Assembly: GCF_963853765.1 (NCBI RefSeq)
Contig: NC_088856.1
Span: forward strand, 25,296,001-25,360,000
Length of the DNA stretch: 64,000 nt
Origin: Magallana gigas
Taxonomy: Eukaryota
Direction of reading: 5' to 3'
Shown here: in pieces, positions 21,478 through 35,630 of the stretch
How the letters are laid out: the number at the start of each line of letters is the position of its first letter
Numbering within the stretch: position 1 is the stretch's first letter
Translations under genes and position numbers: made by a program
The notes under the pieces: model-generated
Told to the model about the DNA's origin: nothing
Seen by the model: the letters and a program-made list of their open reading frames with translations, nothing else
Databases searched by the model: none

Positions 21478-24400
21478 ACCAAACTAACAGCATTGTAGCA
21501 TCCTCACTAAAAACTCAGTGTATGCATAGTAGGCATAGATCGACTAACACTTGCCGTCCGATCAGTCCCTCTAACCAAGCCCCCCACTCCTCATTAAAAC
21601 CTACCCCATCTCCCAAACCCAAGCCCAGTAGTACACCCAAATCTCACAGCTCGGTTAATTTGATTATGCCTATCATGAAAAACACTGTTAGTGTTGATAT
21701 CTATGATACTCCCATGCGTGCATTGGTTGATACAGGTGCATCTATCTCATGTATTACATCCTCTCTTGTGACTAGGTTAGGGATAGACAAGAGTTCAATT
21801 CAATCAACTAATGCAACTGATGCGGTCGCTGTTGGCGGTGAAGTTCATCGCAGTCTTGGTGTTCTATCCTTGCCAATTTCTTTTGATGGTTTTGTTTTTA
21901 CACATGATTTTCAGGTTTATGACAAATTCCATCAACCTCTTATTTTGGGCTTAGATTTTTTAAGAGCAAATGATGCTGTTCTTAGCATTGCACAGAACAC
22001 TCTCTCTCTTAAGGACCCTATTTCTAACCATGTCCTTGCAATTGACGTTAATTCAGGTCTTGCTAGAGTTTGTCAAACAGTCACTGTCAACCCAGGGTGT
22101 GTCATGGCAATTGAGGTATTTATCTCAAGTTCATTAAAAGGTGCTCATGTTCTGTTGGAACCTTCACAACAACTTCCCAAGTTAGGCCTTGCAGGAGCCA
22201 AATGCTTAGTTGATACCCTAAACAACGAGATTCATTATATGCAAGTCATCAATCCTACAACTGACCCAATTACTTTGTCAGCAAATACATGCATTGCATC
22301 TGCCACAGTTGTTAATCCTGATACTGTACTATCTCTAGACAACCCAAAACCATCCAATACAGACTCTGATCCCAAACCACCACAAGGTTGTCCAATAGAT
22401 TTTGATCTTTCTGACTCTAATCTTAATCCCACACAAAAACAGATTCTTCTAGCTTTTCTCAACAAACATAGATCTGTTTTTGCAACAGAATTATCAGAAT
22501 TAGGCAACTGTGCTGTTCAATCCCATCGCATAGAAACTGGTGATGCATTTCCTGTCCGACAGCGATTTTATCGACAGTCCCCAGAAGTAAATGCTGAGAT
22601 GAATAGACAACTAGAGGAGATGTTAGAAGCCAATATCATTGAAGAGTCAACATCTATGTGGCAAAGTCCAGTTGTCATGGTTAAAAAGAAAAATGGCCAA
22701 CTACGTTTTGCGATAGATTATAGAAAGCTAAACTCTGTCACAAAACAATACACATTTCCCTTACCTCGTTTGGAAGATGTTTTTGACACAATTGGCATTT
22801 CTAAAGCACAGATATTTTCTACTCTAGACTTAGCTTCTGGTTTTTGGCAAATACCCATGGATCCTGAAACTGCCCACAAATCAGCATTCGTTACCCCTAC
22901 TGGAGTGTATCAGTGGAAACGTATGCCCTTTGGCCTTGTCAATGCCCCAGCTAGCTTTCAGGCACTTATGACCCAAGTACTTAGGGGTCTTAACTGGAAA
23001 ACCTGTCTTGTCTATGTAGATGATATTCTTGTCTTCTCTAGCTCCTTTGAACAACACCTTCAGCATTTGGATCAAATCTTTTCTCGCCTTAGTTCAGCAG
23101 GTCTTACATTGAAACCTACCAAATGCTCTTTTGCTCAACGCCAAGTGCAGTATCTTGGTCATGTCATTACCAAAGATGGAGTCCAAGTGGATGTTTCTAA
23201 GACAGATGCTGTGAAGTCATTCCCAACACCAAAATGTACAAAAGATGTCCGATCTTTTCTTGGCCTATGTAACTACTATCGAAAATTTATTCATGACTAC
23301 AGTACCATCATAGGACCATTAACAGCATTACTGAGAAAAGACAACAAATTCAAATGGTGTGATGAATGTCAAACAGCCTTCGATCTACTGAAAACAGCTC
23401 TCACATCGCCACCTGTTTTAGCATATCCAGACAACTCCAAACCATTCATCCTTACTACTGATGCATCTGGAACAGCATTAGGGTTTATTCTTGGACAATT
23501 TGATGACAACGGAAAAGAGCGTGTAATTGCATTTGGTGGACGATCCCTCAACAAACATGAAAGAAACTACACCATATCAGAACGCGAATGTTTGGCCATT
23601 ATTGAAGGTATTAAGAATTACCATGTTTATCTCGCTAGCAAACCATTCACAGTGTACACTGACCACTCAGCTCTTAAATGGCTACAGACTGTCAAGCATG
23701 ATACAGGCAGACTCGCTCGTTGGTCCATCCTCTTACAGGGCTACAACTTCAATGTAATCCACAAGAAAGGCAAGAAAAATGGAGTAGCTGATGCCCTCTC
23801 CAGAAGAAACTACCCACAACCACCCAAGAAAGCTGAAGAACCAGAGGATGTCATACCCAGTACTGCTACAGTATCCGTCCTCTCTACTCCATCTGAACAC
23901 AATCAAGCGACTTTCTTCTATAAAAATGAAAACTGTGGATCTCAGCAATCTAAACACCAAACACAATCAAACGTATGCACCATTGACGAATCTACAGAAA
24001 TTGGTCAGCTTCAAAGCCAGTGTCCAGACTTTGGTCCCTTACATGCTTACTTTACAGATGGAGCTGTTCCGTCAACAAAACAAGAGCGTGACAAACTTAT
24101 CTCAGAGAGCAAACATTATGTTTTCTTAGACCATACACTATACCATTTTTACGAACCTCGCTCAAAGAAAATAGCTCAATGTCAACCAATCTTAAAACAG
24201 TTAGCCGTACCACGTTGTCTAAGAGAAGATGTTCTGAGATCCTACCATGACAGTCTAGCAGGAGGAGCACATCTTGGCCTTGACAGAACATATCGAGCAA
24301 TTCAACTGAAGTACTATTGGCCCAAGATGTACCAAAATGTTGCCGACTATATTCGCTCCTGTGATACATGCCAGCATGCCAAGAAACAAACCACTTTACC

Positions 24401-25763
24401 ACGCGCTCCCCTCGTCAATATGCCAGTTGAGGACACTTTCCTACGTCTCCATATGGATATCTTGGGACCACTTACCACATCAAAACAAGGCCACAAATAC
24501 ATCCTACTGGTCGTGGACTCATTCAGCAAATTTCCAGAAGCATTTCCATTAAAAACTCAAGAATCAAAAGAAATAGCTGAAGTTCTCTTCGCAGAAATAT
24601 TTGCAAGATATGGAGCACCACGTGTGATTGTGAGTGATAGAGGACAGAACTTTCTGAGCAAACTTGTTACGGCAGTGTGTGAAATATTCCAAGTCACCAG
24701 ACATTTTACTAGTGCCTACCACCCTCAGACAAATGCAGCTTGCGAAAGAATGAACAGTACCATTGCCCAGTGCCTCCGCACCTACATCAATCCTGAACAA
24801 ACAAACTGGAACAAACTCCTTCCAGGAGTTATGATGGCCTTGAGGATGAGTCCTTCTACACAAGCATCTGATCTGTCACCATACCATCTTGTCTTTGGGA
24901 AAGAAATGAACCTACCATTTGATACTTCACTAATTCCCAAAAATGGACTCAATAAGGATGCAAAAACTCATGTAAGTGATCTCATGTCTCACCTTAAAAT
25001 CGTGAAGAATATCGCAACCAAAAACATCCAAAAAGCCCAACAGAAACAGAAACAGCAGTATGACAAAAAAACTCAAGTTCGAGAGTTTCGTGTAGGACAA
25101 TATGTACTGCTTCACACAACAAAAGTTCCTCAAGGATTGTCACCTAAATTAACCAGCCCATGGGAAGGTCCCTTCTATGTGTGTAGAGTTGGTCCAAACA
25201 ACACCTACAAAGTGCGCAGATGCTCCAACAACAAGGAACTGAAATCCTTCATTCATGTGAACAGACTCAAACCCTACAATGACCCAGATCATCGTCCAAG
25301 TTTTGACCCACCTCGTCCAGATGAACCCATTGATGATGCCCATTATCCCCCAGACCCTGTAATCCCGCAACCTCCAGATGCACCAATTGATGCTACTCAT
25401 CAACCCCCAGAAACTGCACCCGTGCAACAAACCATACAAGTACAACAGGAGCCAAAGTTACCTCCTACTCAAACTGCTGACAATCCAGCACCTTACCCGC
25501 AGCGTTTACGTGCTCAATGTTCATCAGACTCCTCAGTACAGACACAGGACGTCTCTGATAAAACTTATTTTGTTGACAAACTACTGCGCTACAAGTTTGT
25601 CAAAGGCAAGAAGCTATTCCGAGTCAAATGGCTAGGATACGGCGAACGAACATGGGAACCTGAAGAAAATCTTCCTCCCTGTATGGTTCGCAAGTTTCAT
25701 ATTACCAAAACACAACAGGGTTCGGCCCGCAAGAAGAGGACAAAACTGACTTGTTTTAAGTAG
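21447..25763 (+). CDS. pol: Pol polyprotein: aspartic protease, RT, RNase H, integrase with GPY/F motif, chromodomain
   Basis: PR LVDTGAS; RT FAIDYRKLN and YVDDIL; RH TDAS..ERECLAI..TDH..ADALSR; IN H..H..CDTC, MDILGP, SDRG, ERMN and WEGPFY; chromodomain YFVDKLL..VKWLGY..TWEPEENL. Confidence 0.96.
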   Translation, partial: GNAPILSKDRHQTNSIVASSLKTQCMHSRHRSTNTCRPISPSNQAPHSSLKPTPSPKPKPSSTPKSHSSVNLIMPIMKNTVSVDIYDTPMRALVDTGASISCITSSLVTRLGIDKSSIQSTNATDAVAVGGEVHRSLGVLSLPISFDGFVFTHDFQVYDKFHQPLILGLDFLRANDAVLSIAQNTLSLKDPISNHVLAIDVNSGLARVCQTVTVNPGCVMAIEVFISSSLKGAHVLLEPSQQLPKLGLAGAKCLVDTLNNEIHYMQVINPTTDPITLSANTCIASATVVNPDTVLSLDNPKPSNTDSDPKPPQGCPIDFDLSDSNLNPTQKQILLAFLNKHRSVFATELSELGNCAVQSHRIETGDAFPVRQRFYRQSPEVNAEMNRQLEEMLEANIIEESTSMWQSPVVMVKKKNGQLRFAIDYRKLNSVTKQYTFPLPRLEDVFDTIGISKAQIFSTLDLASGFWQIPMDPETAHKSAFVTPTGVYQWKRMPFGLVNAPASFQALMTQVLRGLNWKTCLVYVDDILVFSSSFEQHLQHLDQIFSRLSSAGLTLKPTKCSFAQRQVQYLGHVITKDGVQVDVSKTDAVKSFPTPKCTKDVRSFLGLCNYYRKFIHDYSTIIGPLTALLRKDNKFKWCDECQTAFDLLKTALTSPPVLAYPDNSKPFILTTDASGTALGFILGQFDDNGKERVIAFGGRSLNKHERNYTISERECLAIIEGIKNYHVYLASKPFTVYTDHSALKWLQTVKHDTGRLARWSILLQGYNFNVIHKKGKKNGVADALSRRNYPQPPKKAEEPEDVIPSTATVSVLSTPSEHNQATFFYKNENCGSQQSKHQTQSNVCTIDESTEIGQLQSQCPDFGPLHAYFTDGAVPSTKQERDKLISESKHYVFLDHTLYHFYEPRSKKIAQCQPILKQLAVPRCLREDVLRSYHDSLAGGAHLGLDRTYRAIQLKYYWPKMYQNVADYIRSCDTCQHAKKQTTLPRAPLVNMPVEDTFLRLHMDILGPLTTSKQGHKYILLVVDSFSKFPEAFPLKTQESKEIAEVLFAEIFARYGAPRVIVSDRGQNFLSKLVTAVCEIFQVTRHFTSAYHPQTNAACERMNSTIAQCLRTYINPEQTNWNKLLPGVMMALRMSPSTQASDLSPYHLVFGKEMNLPFDTSLIPKNGLNKDAKTHVSDLMSHLKIVKNIATKNIQKAQQKQKQQYDKKTQVREFRVGQYVLLHTTKVPQGLSPKLTSPWEGPFYVCRVGPNNTYKVRRCSNNKELKSFIHVNRLKPYNDPDHRPSFDPPRPDEPIDDAHYPPDPVIPQPPDAPIDATHQPPETAPVQQTIQVQQEPKLPPTQTADNPAPYPQRLRAQCSSDSSVQTQDVSDKTYFVDKLLRYKFVKGKKLFRVKWLGYGERTWEPEENLPPCMVRKFHITKTQQGSARKKRTKLTCFK

Positions 25764-25933
25764 ATGAACAATTAAGCCCTAGTTCTATCCTGTACCTGCC
25801 CTTTCCTATAATTCTACCTCTAACTATGCTCTCTGAGCCCCTCATCATGTATCATTGTTAATATCTCAATATATTGCTCAAAAGTTGTTATTTGTTATTT
25901 TGACTGTTTGATATTAACAATGAATACATGACC

Positions 25934-25974
25934 CTTTTTTTTTTTCCCCTAATCTTCCTCACTTCCTTCCCTAG
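25934..25974 (+). promoter_or_regulatory. Splice acceptor for a subgenomic env mRNA
   Basis: Long polypyrimidine tract, CTAAT branch-like motif and CTAG|G. The env ORF has no ATG of its own. Confidence 0.7.
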
Positions 25975-28394
25975 GTACCCCAGGACTTCCGCCTACATTG
26001 TTCCTCATTTGTCTTGTCTCCCTTCTTGGAGTTGTGCCTACTGGTAATGCTGCCACATACCAACGTTTAAATTATGGCGTCCTATTTGAGCAACAACAAC
26101 AGCTTTATCTTGGACAGGAGTATTGGTCGCATACTTTCCAAATTCCCCTGCCCAAGAAAGTGTATTTACACAGAGAGCTGTATTGCAACAACGCCCCTCA
26201 TTGTAAGTACGGCAAACATGTGATCAAAACACTCAATGCACTGCGGACCCAAACCATGGCAAACCTAAATGCTACCGTACATGATATTCACATGCTGATT
26301 CCACAAAGTCACCTTCCAAGACCTAAATCCTTCATCGGCTCATCTAGATCTAGATCCAAGCGCGGCATTTTTGACTTTGTAGGACAAATTTCAAAATCCC
26401 TTTTTGGAACAGCAACTTCTGATGATATAGCTACATTGCAACGACACATGCAAACTCTAAACAGAAACAATGCCCAAATTGCTCACACCATGGCCATTCA
26501 AGAGAAACATCTTTCTTCTTTTATATCTACTGTTGATGCCAGGTTTAATAATATAGTAAGTGCGGTAAAGAAAAATCATCAAGACACAGTAGCTCTCACA
26601 GACCTTTTACACAGCTCAGTTGACTCTGTAGAACATGAGTTTATATTATTAGAACAGCTCATCATGAAACAAACGAATGCATCAGCTCATTTACAACAGG
26701 CTTTAGATCGTGTCAAACTCAGCATACATGAACTCATCAAAGGAAAACTCTCACCTTATTTGATCACCCCTCAGGCAATAACATCGTCCCTTCACCAGAT
26801 CCAAAGCATTATGGACAAAAAGTATCCCCAGTTTACTATAATTCATAAAGATCCCCTTTACTATTTTACATATGGTGATTTCTTGTATGCAAGAGTTCAT
26901 TCCACCTTGTTTCTGACACTCAAAGTTCCCATCTCTCCATTTAAACAACCATTGTTATTGTATAATATTTACTCATTTCCTGTTCCAATTAATTCATCTA
27001 CTTCGCATGCCACAAAACTCAAGGATGTACCCCAGTATTTCGCACATACACATGACAATCAACATTTCACAGTGATAACTTCTCACCAGATATCTAAATG
27101 CATTGGAACTTCAATGCTATTTTGCTCATTTCATTTAGCACTCACATCATCTGCATCACCCTCGTGCATTTCAGCATTATTCTACAATCAAAAGGAATCG
27201 GTTCACTTTTTATGTGACTTTCGCTTTCTAACCAATGAAATCAAACCAAATATTGTAGAGTTATCTCCCTCTAACACTCTTATGTACCAAACCCCTATGG
27301 TTGCTCTTGACTGCCCTTCTGGTCAACGAATTATCAAAGGATGTCCCTTTTGTGTCATGCAGTTACCTTGCCTCTGCTCAGTAACATCAGGTACCCTGTT
27401 CTTACCCCCCAGGATGGGTTCATGCAACAATAACTCGCAGTCAGTTACTGTCCTTCACCCAGTCAACCTCGCACTCATCCAAGAATTTTTTGATCCTAAA
27501 TCTCATTCAACTATCTTTGGTGATACAACATTTCAACAATATCTTGATCTCAAAGTTCCAAATTTCAAAATTTTCAATCATTCATTTTCTCATTTTGTGG
27601 CTGCTGATCAAAAACAACACTTAAATTTAAAGAAAATGGCAAAATTAGCACAAAAAGATGCAACAGTGTTTCAATCTTTGGCAGAATCCATGTTAGATGG
27701 TCAAATTGACTTTGCTGTGACCTCTTTCCCTGACACTAGTGGTACCATTGCACTAATCGCTTCTGCCCTCGTTCTCATTTGCATGATTTATTGCATTTGG
27801 TCTTTCTTTAAAATTAGAAAACTGACAACTATTATTACACTTACACAACTTCCTAACTCTGCTAAAGCTTTACCTACCCCTCACCCTGATTTATTATCCT
27901 TATATTCTAACCCTTCCCAAACTGACAACCAAGTAACAACTCTTCAAAATGTTTACACCTCGTTCACATCTCCTTGGCCCTATGTTACACTGTCTGTCCT
28001 AACAACACTGCTTATTTGCTTTTATCTGCACAAACTGTGGAAAAAGTTTAAACGCACGCACAAAACCACTCTTCACTTAGAAATCACAACAGGAACTGAA
28101 TGCATGCTCTTTCCAATCACTACTCTTCCACTTTGTCCAGACAACTGGAACATAACCCCACCACAGGTCATCAACAACATCATACTTCGAAGAACATACC
28201 TCGGCTGGGCTAATTTCACAATCAATGCATCAGATCTCACCATACAAAACAAACATACCAACACCATACTCAACATACCAAACACATTCCGACTTTCACC
28301 ACTTAAAGCACTGAGACTACGTCGTCTGTTACAACAACCATATACTGCATACTACCTTTTGTCCCATCATCAGTATTATCAATTGCTTCAGTAA
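25975..28394 (+). CDS. env: Envelope glycoprotein, F-type class I fusion protein
   Basis: Signal-like LFLICLVSLLGVVPTGNA; furin site RSKR followed by GIFDFVGQISKSLFGTATSDD; heptad region; Cys-rich region; TM IALIASALVLICMIYCIWSFF; second hydrophobic segment. Confidence 0.9.
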
Positions 28395-28892
28395 AAATTT
28401 AATTAGAAATTCCTATGTAGATCTAGGTTATCAAAACTTGCCATTGGTATGAGAGTTGCATACCGAGTCTGATTTGTTCTTAACAGTGTTTATATTGTGT
28501 TTTGGTAAATTTTTACCATAATGATTGATGCATATGTATCACTTCCATTGTACTTAGTACATGTATTTACATGTACTCACATGTCTATGAGTTTCTACAT
28601 GTACTTTTGTATATATAATTACATCTTGCTAATTAACCAAGATATTCTACCAGATTTTTGTGTTTGACATTGATTGCAATGATCTCTAATTTCAATATTT
28701 CATATCATGTTTTCCTTATACATTTTTTATTTTATTCAACAATGTTTGTATTAGAGTACCTAGTTTAGTTATTTTTCTTTAGGGTAGTATTTTCCTACAT
28801 TTTAGGATGTCAACACTAGTTTTTGTTGATTTTATATTTTTTTGTTTTGTATGCATACAATTTTTTTATCTTCGGGGACAAAGATTTCCGAA

Positions 28893-28902
28893 CCAGGAGG
28901 GA
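28893..28902 (+). promoter_or_regulatory. Polypurine tract
   Basis: CCAGGAGGGA lies 2 nt upstream of the 3' LTR. Confidence 0.65.
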
Positions 28903-28904
28903 TT

Positions 28905-30636
28905 TATCATCAGGTCTCATTGACCCTCTGATATTATTTTTATTATATATAATTTTAATGTAATATATCATTTCTCAAACTTATTCAAAAACAGTTCTTT
29001 TTGGTTAAATGCTTTTTACTACTTTTAATTACTACAATTCGTGACTAAGTCTCTGTTTAACTTGTGTCAAGCATTAACAATATCTTTTATTCTATAAATT
29101 AGACACGATAAGAAGTTAGGTACATATTAACACCATTCGATGCCACGAGGAATTTTGGATAATTTGCCAACAAACAACTTTTACATAATCACATGACAAT
29201 CAATTAAGAAAGCCTTTTGATGTCCCCTTTACTCAATTACTGTCAGGATTACGGATTAGCGCTGCTTTTGTTTAGGCCACGCTACATCCCTTCTTTCGGG
29301 TATGAGGCCCCCGACAGGGAAATTATTGTGTTTTCTTTTTAACTTTAATATTGTACACCTATCGTGTACCCTACCTTGACCAAGAGGAATTTTTGTATCA
29401 AAGCCCAGCGCGTCACTTTTGCTGGACGCTTCCTCAATAAAAGACGTTTTCTTCACATTTGAACTCTTGGTCATATTTTACAGGTAGGCAATATTTTACT
29501 TACTTTTTAATTATTTTTGTATTGTACGTTTTTATGATCTCAGGTTTATGTGTTCAATTTTACTTAATTTGTATAACACATCAATATAAGTTTGTACTTT
29601 ATTTTATGTGATTTTTCTTTGTTCTTGTTGCATGTAGATTAGTCATTTACATAGATCCCATTGTATGCTGTTGAAATGCGTAAATGTACAAAAGTAATTT
29701 AATATCGATTGAAAAATTATCTCATTTGAAAATCTAAAATTACTTTGGGTAGATTTATCTCAATATTTGAATTACTCTTTTTATTATTTTTATGCAACAC
29801 TTTTCCTGGAAATTTATGTGTCACATGACCAGTTCTAAATTTAGTCTCGGCTTTGTTTACATGAGTTCGCTTCCGCCCGAATTGAAAATGTCATGACTTA
29901 AGGAAAACATTGTTAATCTGCATAATACATTTGATAACTAAATGGCATAAAGATGTAAGTTGATAATTACATATTTTTACTGTAATTCGTTTAGGGATTT
30001 ATTGTCATTTCATACTTTATGATTCTGATTGAGGGTTTTTATGACAATAGACATGTACAGTGATGCTGTGTGTGTTTTCATTAAGCATTAATGATTTCAA
30101 TTCTTTTATTTGTTTTAACTTCATAAGTGAAAGTCCAGAATCAAAATCTATTTCATCTTTATTCAAACATATCTTTCGATTCAAATCATGAATTTAAATT
30201 GAGTACATGTAGTTTGAAATTATGCAAATAAGACCCTATGCTTATGTCTACTCCTTCATAATTTGTGTACCTTATCATGGCCAAGTGAAGTTCTCTACCG
30301 TTAAAGTTAATTCTCCCCACTTAAGTTAATCTTCCCATTTGATTATAAGCATTTATACTTGATGTGGTTTTTGTACTTTTGTTTATTTTTATTGATGTTT
30401 GCACATGTAAGTCATATGATTAATTTTACATAATGTGGTCATTGATATTTTATATTATCTGTTGCACTATTTTATATGTGCAAAGACTCATTGTTTATAA
30501 TCTTATGATTTATATGTCATGAGACTTTTGCTGGACGCTTCCTCAATAAAAGACGTTTTCTTCACATTTGAACTCTTGGTCATATTTTACAGGTCAACTT
30601 TGATTATATATTTAAACCCCATATTCCATGATGACA
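28905..30636 (+). repeat. 3' LTR (1732 bp)
   Basis: Matches the 5' LTR; only four differences were spotted by eye. Confidence 0.93.
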
Positions 30637-31523
30637 AATAGTTCAGAATTTAAAAACATCAAAGATATAAAAAAATTACCAAAATATCAATTTTTGTAAT
30701 AGTTTGTCGTAATTAGTCTGATTTATTTTTTGCTTCTTAGTGTTTCACTTTCTCATGCTGGAGACTTGGGTTTCTTGTGGCTAGATAGTATGCAAATCTT
30801 CCTTACCTAAACCAAATCGGCAAAAACGCTCAATAATGCCGTGCACTCTGCTGTTGAAATAGATGTGAAATAGATAGTAATGAGATAAATGTTTATAAAA
30901 TACAGTTGTATACGCACGGAAAACGTTCAAAAAGTCCTTGTTTATTGACAAATGATGAATTTTGCACATTTTGGTTTTCATCAAATGGAACGGTTACCCC
31001 CCCCCCCCCCCCTTTTCCAAATTGCTGGATCCGGCTCTGAAAGACTTATAGAAACGAGTTTTGAATAAAAATTAGATGACAACCTCTGCACTGGTAAGGA
31101 GTATCAAATGAATGACGAAACGGAACAGATCGACAGGCACACAAATTTCAGAAATTCTTGTAATTGTTTTCCTGTGTCTGTTTCAACATCGCACAAACCA
31201 CACACTGTGGCAGATCGTGAACTGACCGCATGGATTTTAGAATTGATGTTGCTACTCCTGGATTAATACTATCATTAATCTATTAATATGTTGGATGTAC
31301 ATCTAGTGCCGCCATGGTCTTCAAAATGATGCATACGTTATGCACTCTGTAAGAGCGAAACCCGTGTTCGAAGTGCATGCGAAGCAAGGCAGTCCTATCG
31401 GTGCCAGATAATACGTATACATTGGAAATTTTTTTAAAGAATAATCACATTTTATGTTTCATTTAATGTGATTTCCTTTATTCTATTCTTACAAACATTT
31501 TACTACAATGTGTTGTTCGCTCA

Positions 31524-31677
31524 NNNNNNNNNNNNNNNNNNNNNNNNNNNNNNNNNNNNNNNNNNNNNNNNNNNNNNNNNNNNNNNNNNNNNNNNNNNNN
31601 NNNNNNNNNNNNNNNNNNNNNNNNNNNNNNNNNNNNNNNNNNNNNNNNNNNNNNNNNNNNNNNNNNNNNNNNNNNNN
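31524..31677. other. Assembly gap (N run)
   Basis: N characters. Confidence 0.99.
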
Positions 31678-32188
31678 CAGTTGATTATTGTCAAAATATC
31701 ACTTAGATGCAAGGTATGTGTAATTTTTGCTGCGCTCGCCAGAACGCACCATAAAACTTATCAATTTTAGAAATGACTTGGCATAAGAAATACTGTTATA
31801 TATACTTTTTGGCATTTATGTAGAGGTTAAACAACCAAACACAAAACTTCAGATTATCTGTAGATGGTTAAAACGAAATTGACAAGGTGCAATTTATAAA
31901 CAGAAGTATTCCAAGAATGTCCTAGAATGTGGAGTCGAGCATGTGTATTCCAGTAAAAAAGGACTAAGTTAAACGTAGTTGCTATTATAGCGCTCGAGAG
32001 CGCTAGCAAACACTTTTTCATCAATGCCTTTCTGAATTTGATATCGGATACGTAAATAAAAAAAAATAATTAAAAAAAATATCATCGAAATAATTCAAAC
32101 TTCCGCCAGATTCCTTTGTACCAAACCAAATCTCTGTGTGCGGAGAGACAGAAGACTATGGGTTTGCGAAATGAATCAGAAGCAACTG

Positions 32189-32280
32189 TGACGTCACAGA
32201 TATGCAACGTCATAATATCTTCACAGCTGTAAATTAAAAAAAAAAAGCATCTACATGATTCAGAAGCAATTGTGACGTCA
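32189..32280. promoter_or_regulatory. Two perfect CRE palindromes (TGACGTCA) in a short tandem duplication upstream of the micropeptide gene
   Basis: TGACGTCA at 32189-32196 and 32273-32280. Confidence 0.4.
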
Positions 32281-32590
32281 CGATTCATACGTCATAATAC
32301 CCTCCAGCTATTTCTGAGTAAAGGTGTTGCTTGCCTCCCAGGAATATTCTTCGGAAAATTTTCAGTTTTCAATTATTCCTAAAGCGGAATATTGTATTCA
32401 TTGTTCATTAAGAAGTTTACCAGGACATCAAGAATTCTGTAAGTAGATGTAATTCTGAATATCTGAAAATTAATTTTATTATTTTAGAAATGTAAATTCT
32501 CATTTCACACGATTCTTGTCATGTTTCACGGGTTGATTTATAATTCAATGAAATATCCAATTGTTTCCCTTCTCATTGATAGATACTAAA

Positions 32591-32869
32591 ATGATAGGAT
32601 TCACGATCTTCGTTATGGCGGTGTTTGAAGGATTCAAGTGGCTGAGAAAAGACGGTAAATATTTACCATATATGTACATAAATATCAATAGCATTAATAT
32701 ATACATGCATTGTTATGTATATTTTTTTTCAGTGCTACTAAGATGAAATTGTCTGAAAAAAATGAATAATGCATTTTGTATTCATATCATTTCAGATGAG
32801 GCGGATATGAACCGCGAGATCTCTGAACAGATTGATGCAATGCTAGAGAGCATTCAGAGATCATTGTAA
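32591..32869 (+). CDS. Putative 45-aa spliced micropeptide MIGFTIFVMAVFEGFKWLRKDDEADMNREISEQIDAMLESIQRSL
   Basis: Exon 32583-32654 (AG|...G|GTAAAT, ATG at 32591) and exon from 32796 (TTTCAG|, TAA at 32867-32869). Upstream donor GTAAGT at 32439 and AATAAA at 32879. Differences among paralogs fall mostly at third codon positions. Confidence 0.6.
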
Positions 32870-33063
32870 AAATGTTGAAATAAAACATTTGACCGATCCC
32901 ATTCTGGCCTAATGTTTGATTTTATTTTATTTCGTGTAATGTACATTCAAGTTCAATCAATTTTTTTTATGCTTTTACTGGAACGGTTGCAAATTAACAA
33001 AAACAAAGGATGACCACAAAAGTGCAGGGAATGGGTTATACAAAGACAATGGCTTTACGCAAA

Positions 33064-33069
<6 letters not shown>

Positions 33070-33119
<50 letters not shown>
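33070..33119. repeat. (GA)n microsatellite
   Basis: Direct reading. Confidence 0.97.
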
Positions 33120-33123
<4 letters not shown>

Positions 33124-35264: not shown

Positions 35265-35630
35265 GCACCAAATGTAATGGGATGGGAGAAGTAATGATTG
35301 ACCAGACAGGGATTCGAACCCGGGCCCCCAGAATCTCTAGTCAGGTACTCTACCAACTGAGCTATCTGACACCTATATTCTAACCGGTCTGACCGCCACA
35401 TTCCTCCCCCTCAAATGATATTTGCCCTTGAAGATCACCCCAGGCTCTTCCCATGGCAAGAGTTCACCTGTCAGTTCCAGGTTTGGTCACAGCACCAAAT
35501 GTAATGGGATGGGAGAAATATTGACGTATCAGACATGGATTTGAACAGGGGCCCCCTGAATCTCTGGTCAGGTGCTCTTCCAACTGAGCTATCTGGCGCC
35601 GGTATTTGAACCAGTCTGACCGTCACACAT
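35265..35630 (-). repeat. Two tandem tRNA-derived (SINE-like) units, period about 227 bp
   Basis: Minus strand has A box TAGCTCAGTTGGTAGA and B box GGTTCGAATCC. The second copy is degenerate and the anticodon arm is irregular. Confidence 0.65.

What the first reader, a model, noticed from the sequence alone, without database searches (positions are those of the whole stretch)
32591..32869. Unannotated 45-aa spliced micropeptide family with a coding-type substitution pattern
Seen: two coding exons give MIGFTIFVMAVFEGFKWLRKD-DEADMNREISEQIDAMLESIQRSL, a hydrophobic N-terminus with an acidic amphipathic tail, flanked by canonical splice sites and an AATAAA. Four copies occur in the window. The 15.2-kb copy differs only by two synonymous changes (GCG/GCC, GTG/GTT). 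The tandem-unit copies differ mostly at third positions (TTC/TTT, GTT/GTG, GTG/GTA, GGA/GGT). The gene is too short for the ORF track and I do not recognise the family. Inference: a small membrane-anchored or secreted peptide under purifying selection.
Basis: partly seen in the sequence, partly recalled or inferred. Interest (0 to 1): 0.7.

Follow-up and report, generated by a model that had tools for sequence, protein, structure and literature searches.

The report
Oyster 45-residue micropeptide gene family
This is a real, spliced three-exon oyster gene for a 45-residue peptide, one of at least ten intact copies under strong protein-level selection, but the other three copies in this window are dead or truncated and its function is unknown.

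Summary
The two coding exons (32591-32654, 32796-32869), GT..AG intron, TAA and AATAAA (32879-32884) are as described.

- The 15.2-kb copy has exon 1 only; homology stops at the acceptor.
- Both tandem-unit copies carry TGG>TGA at codon 17 and frameshifting insertions in the second coding exon, and they lack the promoter.
- A 5' non-coding exon (about 32300-32438) is spliced to 32583.

Contigs of one run (X1, labelled RNA only by guess) show the 32654|32796 joint. An intron-less 1473-nt contig from another run maps as three exons onto a paralog.

Genome-wide I verified 10 intact copies on three chromosomes. All have 45 codons and the same phase-1 intron. In frame pN/pS is 0.15-0.17, against 1.2-1.3 in shifted frames (binomial p 4e-18 over five independent pairs). 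All ten intact copies carry a conserved TGACGTCA / ACGTCATAATA promoter module.

Relatives exist only as mis-modelled 89-97-aa 'uncharacterized proteins' of Magallana gigas. There is no Pfam or PDB match.

Predicted: an N-terminal hydrophobic helix (2-20) and an acidic amphipathic helix (26-44). Most likely it is an N-terminally anchored regulatory micropeptide. Translation, membrane anchoring and function are untested.

The parts
32171..32235 (+). Upstream copy of the promoter module, with the palindromic CRE TGACGTCA at 32189-32196
   Evidence: It is a duplicate of 32255-32310 and is also found in paralogs L002, L003 and L004.
32255..32299 (+). Proximal promoter module: CRE TGACGTCA at 32273-32280 and ACGTCATAATA at 32289-32299
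   Evidence: aligned and conserved across seven paralogs, including the divergent L012 and L013; both motifs also lie upstream of L029, L030 and L031; in L032 only ACGTCATAATA lies inside the fetched stretch; 5 TGACGTCA in the window against 0.5 expected.
32300..32438 (+). 5' non-coding exon. The 5' end is approximate; contigs reach 32307. It holds an in-frame TGA at 32315-32317, no ATG, and the donor CT|GTAAGT.
   Evidence: an X1 contig covers 32307-32436 joined to 32583, and an X3 contig covers 32319-32425. One search gives the frame analysis. One search shows the same exon in the mRNA contig of paralog L030.
32439..32582 (+). Intron 1 (GT..AG)
   Evidence: Joint; the acceptor ttgatAG|ATAC is conserved in the seven paralogs aligned.
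32583..32654 (+). Exon 2: 8 nt of 5' UTR, then the ATG at 32591 and codons 1-21 plus the first base of codon 22
   Evidence: X1 contigs cover 32590-32654, one of them with zero differences.
32655..32795 (+). Intron 2, 141 nt, phase 1, GTAAAT..TTTCAG
   Evidence: joints 32653/4 to 32795/6 and a paralog-variant joint; the same intron position in all intact copies.
32796..32900 (+). Exon 3: codons 22-45, TAA at 32867-32869, AATAAA at 32879-32884. The 3' end is approximate.
   Evidence: contigs 32795-32830, 32801-32854, 32825-32878; the first 60 nt of 3' UTR differ by only 2-14% between chromosome-4 (C4) paralogs.
15057..15716 (-). Truncated paralog with promoter, 5' exon, exon 1 (15271-15208, two synonymous changes) and intron. 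The second coding exon has been lost.
7962..8333 (-). Dead copy in tandem unit 2. Exon 1 is 8251-8188 with TGA at 8203-8201; the second coding exon is frameshifted by 7 inserted nt; there is no promoter or 5' exon.
1809..2182 (-). Dead copy in tandem unit 1. Exon 1 is 2099-2036 with TGA at 2051-2049; the second coding exon has a 5-nt insertion; there is no promoter or 5' exon.

Best explanation
Window 32300-32900 (+) is a small three-exon gene. It has a non-coding 5' exon and two coding exons, and its first AUG opens a 45-codon ORF. It belongs to an oyster family with at least 10 intact paralogs on three chromosomes.

Shown:
- The mRNA is spliced at the predicted sites.
- The ORF length, phase-1 intron position and stop position are identical in all intact copies.
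- Substitutions between paralogs are overwhelmingly synonymous.
- Copies that lost the promoter or acquired a stop are decaying.

Inferred:
- The product is translated.
- Residues 1-17 (hydrophobic, with a conserved Glu13 and Trp17, followed by Lys/Arg) act as an uncleaved N-terminal signal anchor. The positive-inside rule would put the N-terminus in the lumen or outside and the rest in the cytosol.
- Residues 26-44 form an acidic amphipathic helix (net charge -5) with a conserved hydrophobic stripe (I30, I34, M37/L38, I41, L45). It faces the cytosol and binds a partner, so the peptide acts as a small regulatory subunit of a membrane protein or organelle surface.
- The paired CRE-type sites conserved in every promoter suggest control by a CREB/ATF-type bZIP factor, that is, signal- or stress-inducible expression.
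For: Splicing:
- contigs of run X1 join 32654 to 32796 (GT..AG) and 32436/8 to 32583.
- an intron-less 1473-nt contig from another run carries a 45-codon ORF. It maps as three blocks onto paralog L030 at 93-98% identity.

Start codon:
- there is no ATG in any frame of the 5' exon, an in-frame TGA at 32315, and A at -3.

Selection:
- variable columns by codon position are 14/11/36.
- pN/pS is 0.17 in frame, against 1.30 and 1.18 in shifted frames. In the broken tandem copies exon-2 divergence (6-13%) exceeds intron divergence (2-6%).
- five independent pairs give 54.5 synonymous against 35.5 non-synonymous differences, where 18.5% synonymous is expected (p = 3.6e-18).

Family size.

Promoter.

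Fold: one search gives helix 2-20 and helix 26-44 at pLDDT 69.5. One search gives a mean Kyte-Doolittle hydropathy (KD) of 1.95 for residues 1-15, a hydrophobic moment of 1.67 for residues 24-45, and charge +1 / -5.
Against: - There is no direct evidence of translation (no Ribo-seq or peptide data).
- Expression evidence for the window's own copy rests on low-depth contigs (depth 3-9) of one run whose RNA label is a guess. Some junction contigs carry paralog variants.
- A 1% sample of a deep polyA run (X20) gave no reads on the gene.
- The hydrophobic core is only about 12-16 residues and is interrupted by Glu13, which is short for a transmembrane span. It could lie in the plane of the membrane or be a cleaved signal.
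- The CRE reading rests on motif conservation alone.
- No partner is known.
Confidence: 0.8

Rival explanations
1. The peptide is a secreted pro-peptide. The N-terminal hydrophobic stretch is a cleaved signal peptide, and the acidic 25-30-residue helix is released, possibly after the Arg-Lys pair at residues 19-20.
For: There is a hydrophobic N-terminus and a dibasic RK at 19-20. The helical C-terminal part is conserved on both faces.
Against: - There is no n-region.
- No good -3/-1 small-residue cleavage site follows the hydrophobic core; Phe sits at -3 before Gly14, by sequence inspection.
- The positive charges lie after the hydrophobic segment, which favours an uncleaved anchor.
- The product would be strongly anionic, with no Cys and no C-terminal Gly for amidation. 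That is unlike known mollusc antimicrobial peptides or neuropeptides (own knowledge).
- RK is replaced by RN or RG in paralogs L030 and L032.
Confidence: 0.12
2. The transcript acts as a non-coding RNA. The ORF is not translated, and the conservation reflects RNA-level or gene-conversion effects.
For: - The mRNA is very short.
- The 3' UTR is more conserved than the intron among the chromosome-4 paralogs.
- There are no protein-level data.
Against: - The excess of third-position and synonymous changes is specific to one frame.
- All 10 intact copies keep exactly 45 codons and the same stop.
- Divergent paralogs with unalignable introns keep the protein.
- The 3' UTR hairpin is not significant (z = -1.4).
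Confidence: 0.05
3. The exons are the 3' end, or an upstream ORF, of a longer gene such as the neighbouring B-box/NHL TRIM-like genes.
For: - In the tandem array each dead copy lies about 2.3 kb upstream of a 554-aa B-box/NHL ORF on the same strand.
- UniProt models of relatives have N-terminal extensions.
Against: - The intact copies are not near any TRIM-like ORF within 10 kb on either side.
- The 5' exon has an in-frame stop and no ATG.
- The UniProt extensions are unrelated to each other.
- The mRNA contig L014 holds only the 45-codon ORF.
- Each chromosome-4 copy has its own AATAAA.
Confidence: 0.03

Closest known systems
Magallana (Crassostrea) gigas 'uncharacterized proteins' K1QVE1 (93 aa), A0A8W8K171 (97 aa) and A0A8W8N8W7 (89 aa)
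   Same: They are true homologues. E-values run from 2.6e-17 to 2.2e-8 at 67-87% identity over all 45 residues. A0A8W8K171 and A0A8W8N8W7 differ by one residue from paralogs L029 and L012 of this genome.
   Different: The database models are 2x longer. Their N-terminal extensions are unrelated to each other; one reads through the stop and one retains part of the intron ('GKYT'). The conserved unit is the 45-residue ORF. None has a name, domain or described function.
N-terminally anchored mitochondrial or ER micropeptides such as mitoregulin (MTLN/MOXI, 56 aa) and STMP1 (47 aa). This comparison is from my own knowledge and was not tested here.
   Same: They share the size class and the architecture: one hydrophobic helix at the extreme N-terminus, then a charged helix, all encoded by a very short mRNA.
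   Different: No sequence similarity was detected with any Pfam or PDB entry. The tail here is strongly acidic rather than basic. The family is multi-copy and seen only in oysters.
SERCA-regulating micropeptides (phospholamban, sarcolipin, sarcolamban, DWORF)
   Same: They are short single-helix membrane peptides that regulate a larger membrane protein, which is the kind of mechanism proposed here.
   Different: Those are tail-anchored, with a C-terminal transmembrane helix. Here the hydrophobic helix is N-terminal, and there is no sequence match.

Membership tests
Oyster 45-aa family (K1QVE1 / A0A8W8K171 / A0A8W8N8W7 relatives) | Significant sequence similarity over the whole 45 residues | tested here: met
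   E = 2.6e-17, 3.6e-12, 4.7e-10 and 2.2e-8; 23 invariant columns.
Oyster 45-aa family (K1QVE1 / A0A8W8K171 / A0A8W8N8W7 relatives) | Two coding exons split by a phase-1 intron after codon 21, with the stop after codon 45 | tested here: met
   identical in all 10 intact copies of this genome.
Oyster 45-aa family (K1QVE1 / A0A8W8K171 / A0A8W8N8W7 relatives) | Promoter with TGACGTCA followed 16-19 nt later by ACGTCATAATA, then a non-coding 5' exon | tested here: met
Translated smORF micropeptide | Spliced, polyadenylation-competent transcript in which the ORF starts at the first AUG | tested here: met
Translated smORF micropeptide | Frame-specific purifying selection | tested here: met
   pN/pS is 0.15-0.17 against more than 1 in the other frames.
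Translated smORF micropeptide | Direct evidence of translation (ribosome footprints or a detected peptide) | not testable with these tools
   No Ribo-seq or proteomic data could be reached.
SERCA regulins (phospholamban / sarcolipin type) | C-terminal tail-anchor transmembrane helix and family sequence signature | tested here: not met
   The hydrophobic helix spans residues 2-20 and there is no Pfam match.
Cleaved-signal secreted peptide (antimicrobial or neuropeptide precursor) | Signal peptide with an n-region, an h-region and a -3/-1 cleavage site, and a basic or Cys-rich or amidated mature peptide | tested here: inconclusive
   Sequence inspection only, with no predictor available. There is no n-region, the -3/-1 site is poor, and the mature part has net charge -5.
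TrbC/VirB2-like pilin repeats (hits P0005 and P0006) | Homology beyond the hydrophobic helix plus the 'G-x-K-W' motif | tested here: not met
   29-31% identity over query residues 2-29 only, in 822- and 1147-aa repeat proteins. I treat this as a composition or motif resemblance.

The most novel reading that the evidence does not exclude
This is an oyster-restricted, multi-copy family of CREB/ATF-driven, N-terminally anchored 45-residue micropeptides. Their conserved acidic helix regulates a membrane transporter or an organelle-surface complex during signalling or stress. On this reading it is a lineage-specific functional counterpart of the vertebrate and insect regulatory micropeptides, hidden so far by mis-modelled annotations.
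Probability: 0.25. Interest if true: 0.65.

Novelty: new member of a known kind. Interest (0 to 1): 0.42.

Why it matters
Very few micropeptide genes have been described outside vertebrates, insects and plants. Here a mollusc family can be defined from sequence alone with unusually clean evidence: ten paralogs with fixed length and intron phase, pN/pS of 0.15, and dead copies as internal controls.

It also corrects three public gene models and gives a concrete gene structure and promoter to test.

The interest is moderate. The class of small anchored peptides is known, and no function is shown.

Tried and rejected
- Word-index protein search with the single peptide found nothing, because of the length and word limits.
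- Exact look-ups of the window peptide and of P0021 in public contigs found nothing.
- Pfam gave only one chance hit at E = 0.1. The PDB profile search gave only kinesin light chain at E = 0.54. Both were rejected.
- The ESM Atlas feature search scored at most 0.78 against unnamed clusters, with recognition 1917 (below the 2300 that 91 in 100 proteins of known families reach), so it is uninformative.
- Foldseek against the Swiss-Prot AlphaFold models gave no match.
- The 3' UTR hairpin that would present AAUAAA is not better than shuffles (z = -1.4).
- A link between the micropeptide gene and the TRIM-like B-box/NHL genes is rejected. They co-occur only in the tandem array of dead copies.
- The TrbC/VirB2-like hits P0005 and P0006 are rejected as relatives.
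- Literature searches for oyster micropeptides and for the three UniProt accessions found nothing relevant.
- Raw polyA reads from X20 (about 1% of the run) gave no reads on the gene, so neither strand nor transcript ends could be read.
- No complex prediction was run, because no binding partner is claimed.

Full report
**Observation**

- The ATG is at 32591. Exon 1 ends at 32654 and is followed by GTAAAT.
- The acceptor TTTCAG ends at 32795. The second coding exon runs 32796-32869 and ends in TAA.
- AATAAA lies at 32879-32884.
- The spliced ORF is 45 codons.

Exon-1 copies occur at 15271-15208, 8251-8188 and 2099-2036, all on the minus strand. Three points were missed.
- The 15.2-kb copy keeps the promoter, the 5' exon, exon 1 (two synonymous changes) and the intron. 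Similarity then stops at 15057, exactly at the acceptor, so its second coding exon is gone.
- The two tandem-unit copies both have TGG>TGA at codon 17.
- They also have a 5-nt insertion in the second coding exon (7 nt in total in the 8-kb copy) that shifts the frame.

The tandem copies have no counterpart of the promoter or 5' exon either. Their homology to the 32-kb unit starts at 32508, inside intron 1. So the window holds one intact gene, one truncated copy and two dead copies.

**Genomic context**

The window is G000:C4:25296001-25360000 of a 564-Mb oyster genome.
- Positions 1-12944 are two 6.15-kb tandem units, with a partial third unit at 13952-14993.
- Each full unit carries a 554-aa single-exon B-box/NHL (TRIM-like) ORF plus one dead micropeptide copy.
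- Two more such units lie just upstream of the window (L007, L008). They share the same TGA and the same 5-nt insertion, so the gene died before the array was amplified.
- None of the intact paralogs has a TRIM-like ORF within 10 kb on either side. The association is therefore incidental.

**Transcript evidence**

Contigs of run X1 laid on 31678-33070 show the following.
- Joints 32653/4 to 32795/6 (GT..AG), plus a paralog-variant version of the same joint.
- One contig covers 32590-32654 with no differences, and another covers 32825-32878.
- A 168-nt contig covers 32307-32436 and continues at 32583, so there is a 5' exon spliced to the acceptor 8 nt before the ATG.
- Run X3 (RNA on record) has a contig on 32319-32425.

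There are caveats. The depths are 2-9, the RNA label of X1 is a guess (although intron-less joints argue for RNA), and some contigs carry paralog or allele variants. About 1% of a deep polyA run gave no reads on the gene.

Independent support comes from the exhaustive protein search. It returned a 45-aa protein (P0002) called on a 1473-nt contig of another run. That contig has the ORF uninterrupted. It maps onto paralog L030 of this genome as three blocks at 93-98% identity, with introns at the homologous places.

**Gene model**

| Part | Coordinates | Notes |
|---|---|---|
| 5' exon | about 32300-32438 | non-coding |
| Intron 1 | 32439-32582 | GT..AG |
| Exon 2 | 32583-32654 | ATG at 32591 |
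| Intron 2 | 32655-32795 | phase 1 |
| Exon 3 | 32796 to about 32900 | TAA at 32867-32869 |

The 5' exon has no ATG in any frame and has an in-frame TGA at 32315, which is conserved in the chromosome-4 paralogs. The ATG at 32591 is therefore the first AUG of the mRNA, and it has A at -3. The three UniProt relatives have N-terminal extensions, but those extensions are unrelated to one another.

**Family**

DNA and profile searches of the genome and inspection of the loci give ten intact copies.
- Five are on C4: the window copy, L002, L003, L004 and L006.
- Three are on C3: L013, L029 and L030.
- Two are on C5: L012 and L032.

All ten have exactly 45 codons, the same phase-1 intron after codon 21 and the same stop position. 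Defective copies also exist.
- The four tandem dead copies.
- The truncated 15-kb copy.
- L011, which has a 3-kb intron insertion and an early stop.
- L031, which has lost its donor site.
- An array of exon-1-like repeats on C6 (L033).

**Selection**

- Across eight intact coding sequences, the variable columns fall 14/11/36 on codon positions 1/2/3.
- Summed pN/pS is 0.17 in frame, against 1.30 and 1.18 in the two shifted frames.
- Five phylogenetically independent pairs give 54.5 synonymous and 35.5 non-synonymous differences. Neutrality predicts 18.5% synonymous, so p = 3.6e-18 and pN/pS = 0.15.
- Synonymous divergence reaches or exceeds intron divergence.
- The divergent C3 and C5 copies keep the protein although their introns cannot be aligned with those of the C4 copies.
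- In the dead tandem copies, the second coding exon diverges faster (6-13%) than the intron (2-6%), and the few exon-1 changes are all non-synonymous. This is what relaxed constraint predicts.

Together this is strong evidence that the 45-residue product is made and matters.

**Promoter**

Every one of the ten intact paralogs carries the same upstream module directly before the 5' exon: the palindromic CRE TGACGTCA followed 16-19 nt later by ACGTCATAATA. For L032 only the second motif lies inside the fetched stretch. L031, which has lost its donor site, carries the module too.
- In the window these sit at 32273-32280 and 32289-32299.
- A duplicated module lies at 32171-32235, with a CRE at 32189.
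- TGACGTCA occurs 5 times in the window against 0.5 expected.

That TGACGTCA is the CREB/ATF site is established knowledge. That these genes are regulated through it is my inference.

**Protein**

- AlphaFold2 on a five-sequence alignment predicts two helices, 2-20 and 26-44, at mean pLDDT 69.5.
- Residues 1-15 have a mean Kyte-Doolittle hydropathy of 1.95.
- The C-terminal part has net charge -5 and a hydrophobic moment of 1.67.
- Invariant residues include E13, W17 and D21.
- A hydrophobic stripe is also conserved (I30, I34, M37, L38 and I41 invariant; position 45 is Leu, Phe in one member), as is an acidic stripe (D25, E29, D35, E39).

My reading is an uncleaved N-terminal anchor with Lys/Arg on the cytosolic side, and a cytosolic acidic amphipathic helix that binds a partner. 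The hydrophobic core is short and contains Glu13. An in-plane anchor or a cleaved signal therefore cannot be excluded.

**Comparison with known families**

- The only homologues are oyster sequences. Three are mis-modelled Magallana gigas 'uncharacterized proteins'. The rest are exon-plus-intron ORFs called on genomic contigs.
- There is no Pfam family, no PDB relative and no Foldseek match. No paper mentions these entries.
- In architecture it resembles the N-terminally anchored micropeptides (mitoregulin, STMP1) more than the tail-anchored SERCA regulins. It is not a member of either group.

**Verdict**

I added a corrected gene model, the true state of the four window copies, the family size, a formal selection test, the conserved promoter and the existing mis-annotations. 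Function remains inferred.

Noticed in passing
window 18136-30637: An LTR retroelement with two 1.74-kb direct repeats (18136-19876 and 28902-30637, 99.4% identical). Between them lie long + strand ORFs at 19758-21446, 21522-25763 and 25998-28394, and G+C is higher (0.39-0.43). I only observed it.
   Followed up: no
window 4220-5884 (-) and 10636-12300 (-): Two 554-aa single-exon ORFs with B-box zinc finger and NHL repeats (TRIM-like), 89.7% identical to each other. There is one per 6.15-kb tandem unit, and the array continues upstream of the window.
   Followed up: partly
window 31706-31746: A 41-nt segment appears at very high depth (up to about 2500 in X5) in all four runs laid on it. The flanks in those runs are consistent with each other but differ from the window, so the reads come from an abundant RNA or repeat elsewhere that shares this piece. 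It lies next to the N run 31524-31677, which I left alone. Rfam gave no match.
   Followed up: partly
window 35299-35371 (-): A tRNA-like sequence (Rfam tRNA, 37 bits). ARAGORN reads its anticodon loop as a 4-base 'agag' and assigns no amino acid. It is probably a tRNA pseudogene or a tRNA-derived repeat.
   Followed up: no
L033 (G000:C6:32006600-32007800, minus strand): Three tandem units of about 210 bp each contain an exon-1-like ORF of the family without a GT donor, and the third is full of stops. There is one TGACGTCA upstream. This looks like a local amplification of exon 1 only.
   Followed up: partly
window 32870-32930 and the same region of L002-L010: The first 60 nt or so after the stop (AATAAA, the likely cleavage site and a GU-rich tract) differ by only 2-14% between the intact chromosome-4 paralogs, whose introns differ by 17-44%; the stretch is also near-identical in the dead copies by inspection. 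The small hairpin there is not significant.
   Followed up: partly
window 33076-33120: A (GA)n microsatellite of about 45 nt lies just downstream of the gene.
   Followed up: no
L011 / ctxL011 (G000:C5:20859000-20878999): This family copy has exon 1 and the second coding exon separated by about 3 kb. The insert includes an inverted-repeat-rich element (GGGAGAAA..CTACTATATAGTAG motifs) directly before the acceptor, and the second coding exon ends early.
   Followed up: no
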